In this document: positions 7,032 through 11,352 of the stretch, one piece after another
How the letters are laid out: the number at the start of each line of letters is the position of its first letter
Position numbering within the stretch: position 1 is the first letter of the stretch
From: Chrysemys picta bellii
Lineage: Eukaryota
Direction of reading: 5' to 3'
Assembly: GCF_011386835.1 (NCBI RefSeq)
Contig: NC_088807.1
Location: 24,738,001 to 24,802,000 of the forward strand
DNA: 64,000 nt
Position numbers and translations under genes: made by a program
Notes under the pieces: model-generated
Seen by the model: the letters and a program-made list of their open reading frames with translations, nothing else
What the model was told of the DNA's origin: nothing
The model's database searches: none

Positions 7032-10000
7032 ATGGGACCCCTGCTGGGGGAGGACACCAGCCAGGTGAGCAGGGGCCTAGGGGGCGCCCCCTAGAGGCGA
7101 AGGGCCCAAGCCCCAGCCCCCGATCCCGGGGCTGGATGGGAGCCGCTGCCTCGGTTGCATCTAGGCCCTTCTCTCCAGCAGGGGGAGGAGGTGGGGGCCG
7201 AGCCGGCGGGCTGGGGGGCCGCTGCGCAGTGGGGAGCCGAGGAGCTGGACGACGTGGACCCCGTGCGAGTCCTCACGCTGCCGCTCCAGGCCCAGCAAGC
7301 CATGGGGAGGATGGAGGAGTTTGTCTTTAAGGTAAGGGGCACGAAGCAGTGGTTGGGTGGTGGGAGGGAGCCAGGACTCCTGGGTTCTCTCCCTGGCTCT
7401 GGGAGGGGAGTGGGGTCTAGTGGTCAGAGCAGGGGGGGGGGCTGGGAGCCAGGACTCCTGGGTTCTCTCCCTGGCTCTGGGAGGGCAGTGGGGTCTAGTG
7501 GTCAGAGCAGGGGGGCGGGGCTGGGAGCCAGGATTCCTGGGTTCTCTGCCTGGCTCTGGGAGGGCAGTGGGGTCTAGTGGTCAGAGCAGGGGGGCGGGGC
7601 TGGGAGCCAGGATTCCTGGGTTCTCTGCCTGGCTGTGTCCTACACAGCTGTGCCCAGTCAGCTGTACCATGTTTGTGCTCTCTCTCTTCCAGTGCCAGGG
7701 GTGCGGGTCATGAGTTTGGGGGTGGTTTGGGGCTGCAGCAATGTGGGACCTGCTCCCCGGTGAGGCGGAGCCCCTGGCCAGAGCAGGGCTGGGGTCCACG
7801 TTTTTCAGTGCCCCGTGGGCCCCCCATCCCCATGTGGGTTCACATTGTGCAGCGGGGAATGGGGAGGGAAGGGGCTGTTCGGGGGTGGCCCCTCCTACTG
7901 CCTGAGCTCTTCGTCTGTGAGCATGTCCGTCTGTCCATCTCCACCTCTGTCACTGGGTGTTCGTCCATTCACCACTGGTCATTCCCATCCATTTGTCCAA
8001 CCATCCATCCATCACTGGTCATTCCCGTCCATCCGTCCGTCCATCCACCCATCACTGGGTGTTCCCGTCCATTTGTCTGTCCATCCGTCCGTCCATCCAT
8101 CACTGGTCATTCCCATCCATTTGTCCGACCATCCATCCATCCACCCATCCATCACTGGGCGTTCCTGTCCATCTGTCTGTCTGTCCTTCCATCACTGGGT
8201 GTTCCCGTCCATTTGTCCATCCATCCTTCCATCACCGGGCATTCCCGTCCATCTGTCCATCCATCACTGGGCATTCCTGTCCATTTGTCCATCTGTCCGT
8301 CCATCCATCCATCAATGGGTGTTCCCGTCCGTCCATCCGTAAGTCAGTCATTGGGGTTTCCCGTCCATCCGTCCATCTCTCCGTCCCTGAGCACGCCCAT
8401 CCATCCATCCCGCGGCGGCCATCCCTCCTCTTCCCCCCCCACCCCCCGGCACCTCCAGTCTCCCTCCGACCCTACCTGTCCCATTCCCCTGGGCCAGTGG
8501 GCGCCGCCTGGGGGCTCAGGGCGGGCCACAGTGGGCTAGCTGGTGGCATTGTGACCTCAGCAGCTGTGCTGCCTGGCCTCCCCGAGCATGCCCATGACAG
8601 CATCCAAGCTACCCCTGGTGGCAGGACCCAGAGGGTCTCTGCCCGGCCATGCCAGGGCCCACCCCGGAGCCAGGGGAGGGGATTGAGTGGCAGGGCTGGA
8701 GGTGGGCCAAGGAGTTGGGGCCTCGGTGGCAGCACGACCCCCAGCTCCACCGGGCTCGGCGCTTGGGCCCAGCCGGCCTCACCGGACCATGGGGAGCGGG
8801 GACGGGAAAGCAACCAGAGACGCCAGCACCAGCACAGAGGAGGACAAGGTCTGGAGAAAGGCAAGGAATTGCCTGGGGCTGGGAGCCAGGACTCCTGGGT
8901 TCTCTCCCTGGCTCTGGGAGGGGAGTGGGGTCCAATGGTTAGAGTGGGAGGCTGGGAGCCAGGACTCCTGGGTTCTCTCCCTGTCTCTGGGAGGGGAGTG
9001 GGGTCCAATGGTTAGAGTGGGGGGCTGGGAGCCAGGACTCCTGGGTTCTCTCCCTGGCTCTGGGAGGGGCGGGGAGAGTCTAGTGATTACAGCAGAGGGG
9101 GGGTAGCTGGGCACCAGGACTCCTGGGTTCTCTCCTGGCTCTCTCCATGCAGGTGTGGGAGGGGCGCTGGAGGGTCATCCCCTACGACGTGCTGCCCGAC
9201 TGGCTGAAGGACAACGACTTCCTTCTCCACGGGCACCGCCCGCCCATGCCCTCCTTCCGCGCCTGCTTCCGCAGCATCTTCCGCCTGCACACGGAGACCG
9301 GCAACATCTGGACACACCTCATCGGTCAGTGGGACCCAGGCGTCCGGGGGCACTGGGTGGGACCAGAGATAGGTGCTAGGGGGCGCTGTAGTGCAAGGAG
9401 ATGCTGCGTTTTATGTGGGTACATCTCAGCGCCGGGCGAGCCGTCCCCATGTGGCGTTATGTGCAGCTGTTCCCTAGCTGCCCCGCCCCAGAGGTGGTTG
9501 CATTTTGACTCTCCTCTCCTCCCATTCCAGGCTTCCTCTTCTTCCTCGTCTTGGGCATTGGTTACATGTTCAGCCCCAACATGAATTACGTGGCCCCCAT
9601 CCAGGAGCGGGTCGTCTTCGGGACGTTCTTCCTGGGGGCCACCCTCTGCCTCTGCTTCTCCTGGCTCTTCCACACGGTGTACTGCCACTCGGAGAGAGTG
9701 TCCCGCACCTTCTCCAAGTGAGTGCCACCCCTGGGGGCGGGGCGCCGCCCGGCCGGACGCCTGGGTTCTTCTAGCCACCATTCAGGAAAGGAAGTGGAGT
9801 CTGGGGTGGCCGGGTGGGTGCTGGGAGCCAGGACTCCTGGGTTCTCTCCCCAGCTCTGGGAGGGCAGTGGGGTCTGGTGGATTAGAGCAGGGTGGGTTGG
9901 GAGCCAGATCTCCTGGGTTCTTTCATTGGCTCTGGGAGGGGACTGGGGTCTGGTGGGTTAGAGCCGGGGGGAGGGGCTGGGAGCCAGGACTCCTGGGTTC

Positions 10001-11352
10001 TCTCCCCGGCTCTAGGAGGGGAGTGGAGGCTAGTGGTTAGAGGTGGGGGGGGAGCCAGGACTCCTGGGTTCTCTCCCCGGCTCTGGGAGGGGAGTGGTGC
10101 CTAGTGGTTAGAGGGGGGGGGCAGCCAGGACTCCTGGGTTCTCTCTGCTGCCCCCGCAGGCTGGATTACTCGGGCATCACGCTGCTGATCGTAGGCAGCT
10201 TCGTGCCCTGGCTGTACTACTCCTTCTACTGCTCGCCCCAGCCCCAGCTCATCTACCTGGTCATCGTCTGCGTGCTGGGCATCACGGCCATCACGGTGTC
10301 CCAGTCCGACCACTTCGCCACGCCCCAGTACCGCGCGGTGCGGGCAGGTGAGCGCCCCTTCGCCCTGGGGGCCTGGATTGCAGGGGCTGGCAGTGGGGGC
10401 TGGGCACAGGGGCTGGCAGGGGGCCTGGGGGCAGGGGGAGGCTGGGGGGCAGGGGGCTGAACACAGGGGCTGGCAATGGGTGCAGGGGCTGGGCTCAGAG
10501 GGGGCTGGGCGTGGGGGTCCCTGGCAGTGGGGACGGGGGCTGGGCACGGGGGCTGGGCGCGAGGGCCCCTGGAGGCAGGGGCTGGGCGCAGGGGGTCCCT
10601 GGCAGTGGGGCTGGGCGCGGGGGGCCCCTGAGGCAGGGACACGCCCTGACCCCTCTCTCTGCCCCCGGCAGGCGTGTTCCTGGGCTTGGGGCTCAGCGGG
10701 CTGGTGCCCACCCTGCACTTCCTGCTGGCCGAGGGGCCGGGGCGGGCGGCGAGCGCCGGGCAGATTGGCTGGCTGTTCCTCATGGCGCTGCTCTACATCC
10801 TGGGCGCGGCGCTGTACGCCGCCCGCGTGCCCGAGCGCTTCTTCCCCGGCAAGTGCGACATCTGGGTGAGTCCCCCGCCCGCCCGCCCGCCCGCGCATGG
10901 CCTGCTGGGAGCCCGGACGCCTGGGTTCTTTCTGGGCGCTGGGAGGGGACCGGGGTCTAGCGGTCAGAGCAGGGGACGCTGGGAGCCCGGACGCCTGGGT
11001 TCTCTCCCCAGCCTTGCTCCAGGCTCTGTGTGATCTTAGCGAACTCTTTTCTGTCTCTGTGAGTGTTTGTGCTACTTACCCCCTGGGTGGGGTGGGGCTG
11101 ATACTTACCCTCCTCCTGGGGGGGTTGGGTGCCCAGGGAGGGGGCGGGGCCTGGCTTGCTCCTGCCAGGGGAGGTGGGCAGAGCCAGGCTCACCTCTCCC
11201 CCTTTCTCCCCCCCTCCCCGCAGTTCAACTCCCACCAGATCTTCCACGTGCTGGTGGTGGCGGCCGCCGGCGTCCACCTCCACGGGGTCTCCCAGCTCCA
11301 GGCCTTCCGCTCCTCGCTGGGGGGTGCCTGCACCGAGAGCTCTGTGCTGTGA
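7032..11352 (+). CDS. Adiponectin receptor (PAQR family) paralogue, about 351 aa
   Basis: Exons 7032-7064, 7179(or 7182)-7331, 9153-9324, 9531-9717, 10160-10347, 10672-10865, 11224-11352; all GT-AG, frames join (1056 nt). Motifs VRVLTLPLQ, VWEGRWRVIPYDVLPDWLKDND, HTETGNIWTH, FSWLFH, LDYSG, PERFFPGK, SHQIFH. Start codon uncertain. Confidence 0.93.
7920..8410. repeat. Degenerate (CCAT)n/ccatcactgg microsatellite
   Basis: Runs of ccatccatcc interspersed with atcactggg. Confidence 0.85.

What the first reader, a model, noticed from the sequence alone, without database searches (positions are those of the whole stretch)
7032..11352. Probable third adiponectin receptor (AdipoR ohnologue) beside RBM10
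Seen: an intact 7-exon AdipoR with the zinc/ceramidase-site residues (SWLFH, LDYSG, SHQIFH). Its sequence is a mosaic of ADIPOR1-like (VRVLTLPLQ, IPYDVL) and ADIPOR2-like (YMF, FATPQYR) positions and more divergent than expected for a true orthologue. Known: human ADIPOR1 (1q32) and ADIPOR2 (12p13) lie in the paralogon whose other members are 3p21 and Xp11, and RBM10/NDUFB11 are Xp11 genes. Inference: this is a 2R ohnologue lost in mammals.
Basis: partly seen in the sequence, partly recalled or inferred. Interest (0 to 1): 0.72.

Follow-up and report, generated by a model that had tools for sequence, protein, structure and literature searches.

The report
Third adiponectin-receptor gene in a turtle
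An intact, transcribed gene beside RBM10 in a painted-turtle-type genome encodes a third adiponectin-receptor-type membrane enzyme that sharks, rays, bichir, gar, lizards, snakes, turtles and monotremes keep, that was not found in placentals or marsupials, and that databases mislabel as ADIPOR1 or ADIPOR2.

Summary
A 7-exon GT-AG gene at 7032-11352 (+) encodes a 350/351-residue AdipoR protein with all zinc-site residues. Assembled RNA contigs from four studies skip all six introns at the predicted sites.

In two careful ML trees the protein lies in neither the ADIPOR1 clade (98/94) nor the ADIPOR2 clade (100/99). It lies in a third clade, X (100/98), made of sharks, a ray, bichir, gar, squamates, turtles, platypus and echidna, with a hagfish/lamprey group as sister. 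Several species carry both X and a true ADIPOR1; echidna carries X and a true ADIPOR2. Fish adipor1b falls inside ADIPOR1, so it is not X.

dN/dS is 0.06-0.23. The gene is linked to RBM10 and NDUFB11, which lie in the human Xp11 block of the CACNA1-L paralogon. ADIPOR1 and ADIPOR2 occupy the chromosome 1 and 12 blocks of that paralogon.

One correction: X is not lost in all mammals, because monotremes keep it. No X was found among bird, crocodilian, amphibian, teleost or therian proteins, but this absence is provisional.

The window protein equals Chrysemys RefSeq XP_005312006.2, which is named "adiponectin receptor protein 1". I found no paper describing this third clade. It is a new member of a known kind.

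The parts
6865..7064 (+). First exon: 5' UTR plus coding 7032-7064 (11 codons from the ATG)
   Evidence: RNA contigs start at 6865-6923 and end at the 7064 donor (table 8); ATG and GT donor are read
7179..7331 (+). Exon 2, N-terminal cytoplasmic region. A NAGNAG acceptor: 7179 is used in RNA, 7182 is the alternative
   Evidence: Joint 7064>7179 in three runs; RefSeq protein P0348 carries the extra Gln
8631..8848 (+). Alternative 5' exon (coding 8789-8848, 20 codons) spliced to exon 3; gives a short N-terminal isoform
   Evidence: Joint 8848>9153 in run X6; the same 20 residues begin Mauremys isoform X3, P0168
9153..9324 (+). Exon 3, conserved cytoplasmic AdipoR-specific region before TM1
   Evidence: Joints 7331>9153 and 9324>9531; exon-limited DNA conservation with python and ray
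9531..9717 (+). Exon 4, with the SWLFH motif (zinc ligand His166)
   Evidence: Pfam HlyIII positions 17-76; His invariant in all clades; joints
10160..10347 (+). Exon 5, with the LDYSG motif (Asp183)
   Evidence: Pfam HlyIII positions 79-140; PDB matches to ADIPOR2 and ADIPOR1 score equally, 101.1 and 100.6 bits
10672..10865 (+). Exon 6
   Evidence: Pfam HlyIII positions 142-205; joints 10347>10672 and 10865>11224 in four runs
11224..11352 (+). Exon 7 coding part, with SHQIFH (His312, His316), the extracellular C-terminal tail and the stop codon; the 3' UTR follows
   Evidence: contigs run on to 11366-11454
11401..11717 (+). 42-base tandem repeat (7.5 copies) in the probable 3' UTR
   Evidence: RNA contigs cover 11517-12000 but are broken at the repeat
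23820..25907 (+). Downstream neighbour: DH and PH exons of a NET1/ARHGEF3-type RhoGEF (the gene spans roughly 12-26 kb)
   Evidence: Pfam RhoGEF and SOS1_NGEF_PH; PDB NET1 113 bits, ARHGEF3 104 bits; same gene order in leatherback and echidna
27447..32029 (+). Next neighbour: DUF4743-Nudix gene
   Evidence: Exon-level DNA matches to the python gene annotated PF15916 plus NUDIX
35669..47971 (-). RBM10 (OCRE, RanBP zinc-finger, RRM and N-terminal exons)
   Evidence: Pfam; the best PDB match of the OCRE exon is RBM10, 2mxw, ahead of RBM5; N-terminal exon read
62650..62799 (+). NDUFB11 exon (ESSS domain)
   Evidence: Pfam PF10183, E = 3.4e-19

Best explanation
The gene is a functional member of a third vertebrate adiponectin-receptor lineage, here called clade X. 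It is a sister lineage of ADIPOR1 and ADIPOR2 and arose by early vertebrate duplication, most likely whole-genome duplication, since it sits in the Xp11-type block of the paralogon that holds ADIPOR1 (1q32) and ADIPOR2 (12p13). It survives in cartilaginous fishes, bichir, gar, squamates, turtles and monotremes. It was not found in therians. Shown here: intact structure, correct splicing in RNA, purifying selection, a clade of its own, and linkage to RBM10 and NDUFB11. Inferred: how it works. It should be a seven-helix class I PAQR membrane protein with a cytoplasmic N-terminus and an intramembrane zinc site formed by His166, His312 and His316, with Asp183 (window numbering). By analogy with ADIPOR1/2 it should hydrolyse ceramide-like lipids and signal membrane and lipid state, possibly modulated by adiponectin or CTRP ligands.
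For: Gene model with six canonical introns. Contigs from four runs in four studies and two organism labels skip all six introns at the GT..AG sites; one 981-nt contig joins exons 2-7. These small runs hold 0.20-0.24 of the locus words, which equals the exonic share. Pfam HlyIII matches on exons 4-7. The full-length database twin P0348 matches human ADIPOR2 and ADIPOR1 structures at 530 and 523 bits over residues 64-350. The zinc ligands and nearby Ser and Tyr are invariant in X, ADIPOR1 and ADIPOR2. In the exon 5 search of 1.84 billion representatives, three proteins (softshell turtle, cobra, gar) stand out at 89-95% against 81% or less for all others. ML trees give X 100/97 and 100/98, ADIPOR1 99/97 and 98/94, ADIPOR2 100/99; X plus a cyclostome trio gets 97/90 and 96/88. 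Mean identity is X-R1 0.75, X-R2 0.78, R1-R2 0.79. dN/dS against leatherback is 0.23, echidna 0.15, ray 0.12, python 0.06 and white shark 0.06, with no stops in any orthologue's exons. Neighbours are RBM10 and NDUFB11. PMC3826523 defines the paralogon blocks as chr1 196-206 Mb, chr12 0-7 Mb, chr3 48.5-58.5 Mb and chrX 44-54 Mb, with RBM, UBA and TIMM17 among the neighbour families. PMC12616123 lists ADIPOR2/ADIPOR1 as a paralogon pair.
Against: No enzymatic, ligand-binding or tissue data exist for any clade X protein, so the mechanism rests on conserved residues only. The order of branching among X, ADIPOR1, ADIPOR2 and the other lamprey genes is unresolved (open forks). Amphioxus and tunicate sequences were not sampled, so 'vertebrate-specific' and '2R' are not directly shown. 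Human map positions of ADIPOR1, ADIPOR2, RBM10 and NDUFB11 come from general knowledge, not from a tool here. Chromosome-scale synteny in shark, gar or bichir was not obtainable: flanks of 10 kb showed no neighbours. The runs are only guessed to be RNA, although intron-free contigs with exon-only word share are hard to explain otherwise.
Confidence: 0.87

Rival explanations
1. It is simply the turtle orthologue of ADIPOR1 (as RefSeq names it in Chrysemys) or of ADIPOR2 (as Ensembl/UniProt names several relatives), only fast-evolving.
For: Database names: 'adiponectin receptor protein 1' for P0348, 'Adiponectin receptor 2' for cobra, platypus and Pelusios models. Identity to ADIPOR1/2 is still 75-78%.
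Against: Starred branches keep ADIPOR1 and ADIPOR2 each as one clade without it. Chrysemys, Gopherus flavomarginatus, Mauremys reevesii and Varanus each have a separate protein inside the ADIPOR1 clade, and echidna has a separate ADIPOR2. The inconsistent names (1, 1-like, 2-like, 2) themselves show that the annotation pipelines could not place it.
Confidence: 0.02
2. It is a lineage-specific (reptile or amniote) duplicate of ADIPOR1 or ADIPOR2, or the counterpart of the teleost extra copy adipor1b.
For: Most full-length hits are from reptiles. Fish are known to have an extra adipor1b (PMC10643153).
Against: Clade X includes white shark, horn shark, basking shark, stingrays, bichir and gar, with very short branches. 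Cyprinid adipor1b proteins P0301 and P0303 nest inside teleost ADIPOR1.
Confidence: 0.02
3. It is a true third paralogue but arose by a small-scale or pre-vertebrate duplication, not by the 1R/2R genome duplications.
For: The branching order among the three clades is unresolved, and amphioxus and tunicates were not sampled. Some neighbours, such as CCDC115 in python, are not Xp11 genes in human.
Against: Hemichordate, sea urchin and insect AdipoRs fall outside all vertebrate sequences (94-99 support). The three genes lie in three blocks of one documented 2R paralogon (plus general knowledge of the human map). A cyclostome group is sister to X, as expected for a duplication near the vertebrate base.
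Confidence: 0.08
4. It is a decaying or non-functional copy (pseudogene or unexpressed relic) that merely looks intact.
For: It lies in very GC-rich, repeat-filled DNA (GC3 0.94; SINE arrays in introns). Amniote branches of X are longer than those of ADIPOR1.
Against: The frame is open. All splice sites are canonical and are used in RNA contigs of two organisms. dN/dS is 0.06-0.23. Catalytic residues are invariant across roughly 450 million years.
Confidence: 0.02

Closest known systems
ADIPOR2 (PAQR2), human structures 5LWY/5LX9
   Same: Seven-helix HlyIII/PAQR fold. About 78% mean identity over the core. Identical zinc ligands (H202/D219/H348/H352 equal window H166/D183/H312/H316). At 5 strongly conserved columns X agrees with ADIPOR2 only.
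   Different: Separate clade since before the shark-bony vertebrate split. Different chromosomal block: RBM10/NDUFB11 rather than 12p13. Shorter, unrelated N-terminus. Own C-terminal tail, for example Gln332 and Ala335 where both known receptors have Asn and Glu.
ADIPOR1 (PAQR1), human structures 5LXG/6KS0
   Same: Same fold and catalytic residues. About 75% identity. The N-terminal motif around VRVLTLPLQ and IPYDVL resembles ADIPOR1.
   Different: Separate clade. ADIPOR1 is nearly frozen in sequence (within-clade identity 0.90, near-zero branches), whereas amniote X evolves faster. True ADIPOR1 co-exists with X in six sampled species.
Teleost adipor1a/adipor1b
   Same: Also a 'third' AdipoR gene in some vertebrates, and shown to respond to adiponectin in goldfish (PMC10643153).
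   Different: adipor1b nests inside ADIPOR1 as a fish-specific duplicate. It is not orthologous to clade X.
PAQR3 (RKTG), sometimes called 'AdipoR3'
   Same: Same PAQR superfamily. The name AdipoR3 is already used for it (PMC13725360).
   Different: PAQR3 is a distant Golgi PAQR, not a close ADIPOR1/2 paralogue. The present gene is 75-78% identical to ADIPOR1/2, so a different name would be needed to avoid confusion.
Invertebrate and fungal AdipoR homologues (C. elegans PAQR-2, yeast Izh2)
   Same: Single-lineage AdipoRs with ceramidase or membrane-fluidity roles (PMC8088037). They are the outgroup state from which the three vertebrate genes derive.
   Different: 44-55% identity only. They branch outside all vertebrate sequences.

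Membership tests
AdipoR subfamily of PAQR (class I PAQR; ADIPOR1/2 type) | HlyIII/PAQR seven-helix domain (Pfam PF03006) | tested here: met
   Exons 4-7 match profile positions 17-224 colinearly, E down to 5.5e-17; PF03006 is precomputed for all clade X proteins
AdipoR subfamily of PAQR (class I PAQR; ADIPOR1/2 type) | Zinc site: three His plus Asp in the motifs SWLFH, LDYSG and SHQIFH | tested here: met
   H166, D183, H312 and H316 align with ADIPOR2 H202, D219, H348 and H352 and are invariant in 18-22 clade X rows
AdipoR subfamily of PAQR (class I PAQR; ADIPOR1/2 type) | Close full-length similarity to solved ADIPOR1/2 chains, including the AdipoR-specific cytoplasmic segment before TM1 | tested here: met
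   P0348 (identical to the window protein but for one residue) scores 530 and 523 bits, E about 1e-158, over residues 64-350
AdipoR subfamily of PAQR (class I PAQR; ADIPOR1/2 type) | Ceramidase activity, adiponectin responsiveness, membrane-fluidity signalling | not testable with these tools
   No biochemical data; inferred from conserved residues and from PMC8088037
ADIPOR1 orthologue group | Nests within the ADIPOR1 clade and is the only such gene in the species | tested here: not met
   ADIPOR1 is one clade without it (99/97, 98/94). Chrysemys P0194, Gopherus P0190, Mauremys P0196 and Varanus P0304 are the true ADIPOR1 proteins
ADIPOR2 orthologue group | Nests within the ADIPOR2 clade | tested here: not met
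   ADIPOR2 is one clade without it (100/99). Echidna has ADIPOR2 P0330 and X P0342
Early-vertebrate (1R/2R) ohnologue of ADIPOR1/2 | Each paralogue clade holds both cartilaginous and bony vertebrates; invertebrate deuterostomes branch outside | tested here: met
   The outgroups were hemichordate, sea urchin and insect only; amphioxus and tunicates were not sampled
Early-vertebrate (1R/2R) ohnologue of ADIPOR1/2 | Paralogues lie in paralogous chromosome blocks | tested here: inconclusive
   Linkage of X to RBM10 and NDUFB11 is shown. The blocks are defined in PMC3826523, and ADIPOR1/ADIPOR2 are listed as a paralogon pair in PMC12616123. Human coordinates of the four genes are from general knowledge, and no chromosome-scale map of X in other species was obtainable
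Expressed protein-coding gene | Spliced transcripts and purifying selection | tested here: met
   All six introns are removed in contigs of four runs; dN/dS 0.06-0.23

The most novel reading that the evidence does not exclude
Vertebrates ancestrally had three adiponectin-receptor-type ceramidases. The third has hagfish and lamprey counterparts and is almost unchanged between sharks, bichir and gar. It may have a distinct role, such as its own ligand, lipid substrate or tissue. It was discarded several times independently (therians, and possibly teleosts, amphibians and archosaurs). In therians it may have gone together with its two neighbours, a NET1/ARHGEF3-type RhoGEF and a DUF4743-Nudix gene, from the interval next to RBM10 on the future X chromosome.
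Probability: 0.4. Interest if true: 0.65.

Novelty: new member of a known kind. Interest (0 to 1): 0.55.

Why it matters
Reviews and comparative papers found here treat vertebrates as having two adiponectin receptors (for example PMC4950565 and PMC8088037). A third, equally old and conserved paralogue is expressed in turtles and intact from sharks to monotremes. This changes three things. First, orthology-based naming is affected, because RefSeq, Ensembl and UniProt call it ADIPOR1, ADIPOR1-like, ADIPOR2-like or ADIPOR2 in different species. Second, expression or knock-out studies of adiponectin signalling in reptiles, cartilaginous fishes, gar and monotremes need re-reading with three genes in mind. 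Third, the ancestral function of the family can be reconstructed differently. The gene also offers a natural experiment: what did therians do without it, and does it differ in substrate or ligand from ADIPOR1/2? It adds a family to the CACNA1-L/opsin paralogon with the pattern 1q32 / 12p13 / Xp11-lost. The scientific surprise is moderate, because ohnologues lost in mammals are common.

Tried and rejected
Exons were searched singly by reference, and full-length searches used database proteins (P0001, P0254, P0348). Exons were joined only inside local scripts for alignment, trees and dN/dS.

- No stop-free stretch around any exon was long enough to bring full-length candidates into the length window of the word search, so I used the representative search on exon 5.
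- The look-up of encoding contigs had no record for the bichir and gar proteins.
- The ray and white-shark loci showed no neighbour within 10 kb, so deep synteny stayed untested.
- The search of earlier findings had no note on adiponectin receptors elsewhere in this genome, so a separate ADIPOR2 locus in this genome could not be confirmed.
- Literature searches for a third vertebrate AdipoR found nothing. 'AdipoR3' in papers means PAQR3 or a nematode gene.
- The fragment-range search found X-level identity only in two rays. Absence in birds is weak evidence, since the Xp11-block genes are generally missing from bird assemblies (PMC3826523).
- Structure prediction was not run, because 75-78% identity to solved structures makes the fold certain.
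Full report
**The object.** The stretch 7032-11352 (+) holds seven exons with canonical AG/GT borders: 7032-7064, 7182-7331, 9153-9324, 9531-9717, 10160-10347, 10672-10865 and 11224-11352. Together they give 350 codons and one terminal stop. The window has no N. Exons 4-7 match Pfam HlyIII colinearly at profile positions 17-76, 79-140, 142-205 and 206-224. The quoted motifs SWLFH, LDYSG and SHQIFH are present. The coding sequence is extremely GC-rich (GC3 0.94). The introns are filled with SINE-like 71-79 base arrays and a 40-80 base minisatellite.

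**Transcription.** Fourteen small public runs hold 0.20-0.24 of the sampled words of the locus. That equals the exonic share (1053 of 4321 bases). Five large runs hold 0.75-0.81 and are genomic DNA. I laid contigs of four small runs, from four studies and two organism labels, on 6600-12000.
- All six introns are skipped at the modelled GT..AG sites: 7064>7179, 7331>9153, 9324>9531, 9717>10160, 10347>10672 and 10865>11224.
- One 981-nt contig joins exons 2-7, and one 876-nt contig joins exons 3-7.
- The RNA uses the acceptor at 7179, three bases upstream of the model. This adds one Gln and gives the 351-residue protein of RefSeq.
- One run also shows an alternative 5' exon (8631-8848, ATG at 8789) spliced to exon 3. 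Its 20 residues are identical to the start of Mauremys isoform X3.
- The runs are only guessed to be RNA. Intron-free contigs in runs that lack the intron words are hard to explain otherwise.

**Identity.** Exon 5 alone matches human ADIPOR2 and ADIPOR1 structures equally, at 101.1 and 100.6 bits. Against 1.84 billion representatives, three proteins stand out at 89-95% identity while everything else is at 81% or less. These three are a softshell-turtle 'ADIPOR1-like', a cobra 'Adiponectin receptor 2' and an 'uncharacterized' gar protein.

Searching with the correct part of the softshell protein gave a set that scores above all ADIPOR1/2 proteins. The set comprises turtles, squamates, bichir, three sharks, a stingray and platypus. 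The window protein has no mismatch, and one single-residue gap, to Chrysemys picta bellii XP_005312006.2, which is named 'adiponectin receptor protein 1'. The window is therefore from Chrysemys or a very close emydid.

**Phylogeny.** I built two careful ML trees (LG+C20 PMSF) rooted on invertebrate AdipoRs. The first has 73 rows and 318 columns; the second has 70 rows and 330 columns. Both show three separate clades, each containing cartilaginous and bony vertebrates.
- ADIPOR1: 99/97 and 98/94.
- ADIPOR2: 100/99.
- Clade X, with the window: 100/97 and 100/98.

A hagfish/lamprey trio is sister to X (97/90 and 96/88). Cyprinid adipor1b lies inside ADIPOR1, so it is not X. Platypus and echidna lie inside X, and echidna also has a true ADIPOR2. 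Chrysemys, Gopherus flavomarginatus, Mauremys reevesii, Varanus, white shark and gar each have both an ADIPOR1 and an X protein. Mean identities are X-R1 0.75, X-R2 0.78 and R1-R2 0.79, so X is as old-looking as the split between the two known receptors.

**Constraint.** Python, ray, leatherback, echidna and white-shark loci align to the window exon by exon, with conservation stopping at the exon borders and no stop codons. Nei-Gojobori dN/dS values are:
- leatherback 0.23
- echidna 0.15
- ray 0.12
- python 0.06
- white shark 0.06

dS is near saturation for the distant pairs, so those ratios are rough. The zinc ligands align with ADIPOR2 H202/D219/H348/H352, and neighbouring Ser and Tyr residues are invariant in all three clades. 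Only four strongly conserved columns are unique to X: window positions 106, 287, 332 and 335.

**Surroundings.** A NET1/ARHGEF3-type RhoGEF follows downstream on the same strand. The same order is seen in leatherback and echidna. Next comes a DUF4743-Nudix gene, which also follows X in python and is fused to X in a Podarcis model. RBM10 follows on the minus strand, and its best PDB match is RBM10 rather than RBM5. An NDUFB11 exon lies at 62650-62799.

PMC3826523 defines the CACNA1-L paralogon as human chr1 196-206 Mb, chr12 0-7 Mb, chr3 48.5-58.5 Mb and chrX 44-54 Mb, with RBM, UBA and TIMM17 among its families. PMC12616123 lists ADIPOR2/ADIPOR1 as a paralogon pair. From general knowledge of the human map, ADIPOR1 (about 202.9 Mb), ADIPOR2 (about 1.7 Mb), RBM10 and NDUFB11 (about 47.1 Mb) fall in the chr1, chr12 and chrX blocks. 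X is thus the chrX-block member. This step is inference.

**Distribution.** No bird, crocodilian, amphibian, teleost, marsupial or eutherian protein scored with clade X in the full-length search. The same holds in the fragment-range search, where only two rays reached 80%. This supports loss in therians but is provisional. For birds it is weak, because PMC3826523 notes that chrX-block orthologues are missing from bird assemblies.

**Mechanism (inferred).** By residue conservation and 75-78% identity to solved structures, the product should be a class I PAQR. It should have a cytoplasmic N-terminus, seven helices and an intramembrane zinc site acting on ceramide-like lipids. It should take part in the membrane-composition and adiponectin signalling described for ADIPOR1/2 (PMC8088037). 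No experiment exists for any clade X protein.

**Novelty.** The gene is present in annotation under contradictory names. Nine literature searches found no description of a third vertebrate AdipoR. 'AdipoR3' in papers denotes PAQR3 or a nematode gene. PMC4950565 states that vertebrates have the AdipoR1 and AdipoR2 groups. Subscription journals and database gene trees were not searchable. My verdict is a real, functional, apparently undescribed third member of a known family.

**Limits.** ADIPOR2 in this genome, deep synteny and invertebrate chordates were not tested.

Noticed in passing
window 12000-26000 (+); DH exon within 23820-24473, PH within 25470-25907: The RhoGEF directly downstream of the AdipoR gene is of the NET1/ARHGEF3 type (PDB 113 and 104 bits). 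It keeps this position in leatherback turtle and echidna. It may be a third paralogue of that family and another gene missing beside human RBM10. Its orthology was not tested.
   Followed up: partly
window 27447-32029 (+): The DUF4743-Nudix gene lies between the RhoGEF and RBM10. It also follows the AdipoR gene in python, and one Podarcis gene model fuses it to the AdipoR gene (PF15916 plus PF03006).
   Followed up: partly
window 8631-8848 (+): An alternative 5' exon of the AdipoR gene lies inside intron 2 (ATG at 8789, 20 codons). It is joined to exon 3 in one run and matches Mauremys isoform X3. This implies a second promoter and a short N-terminus.
   Followed up: partly
window 7175-7182 (+): There is a NAGNAG tandem acceptor at exon 2. 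RNA contigs use 7179, which adds one Gln; the 7182 form was not seen in the four runs laid.
   Followed up: yes
window 11401-11717 (+): A 42-base tandem repeat (7.5 copies, 91% matches) lies just after the stop codon, in the probable 3' UTR. RNA contigs break there.
   Followed up: no
window 7366-7634, 8877-9069, 9823-10145 and 7964-8386: Introns 2 and 4 hold tandem arrays of a 71-79 base SINE-like unit (GGGAGCCAGGACTCCTGGGTTCTC...). This unit is hugely abundant in the RNA-type runs, where depth reaches the thousands. Intron 2 also holds a CCATCC-rich 40-80 base minisatellite.
   Followed up: no
L003 495-3882 and L004 1-3075 (python): In python the upstream neighbour of the AdipoR gene is CCDC115 (Vma22 domain), which is a chromosome 2 gene in human. 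No counterpart was recognised in window 1-6900, which is mostly proline-rich low-complexity repeats.
   Followed up: no
proteins P0001, P0003, P0162, P0167, P0171, P0172: Many database models of this gene are mis-spliced. Some read the last exons out of frame, some carry intron insertions, and one is fused to a neighbour. They are named ADIPOR1, ADIPOR1-like, ADIPOR2-like or ADIPOR2 in different species.
   Followed up: partly
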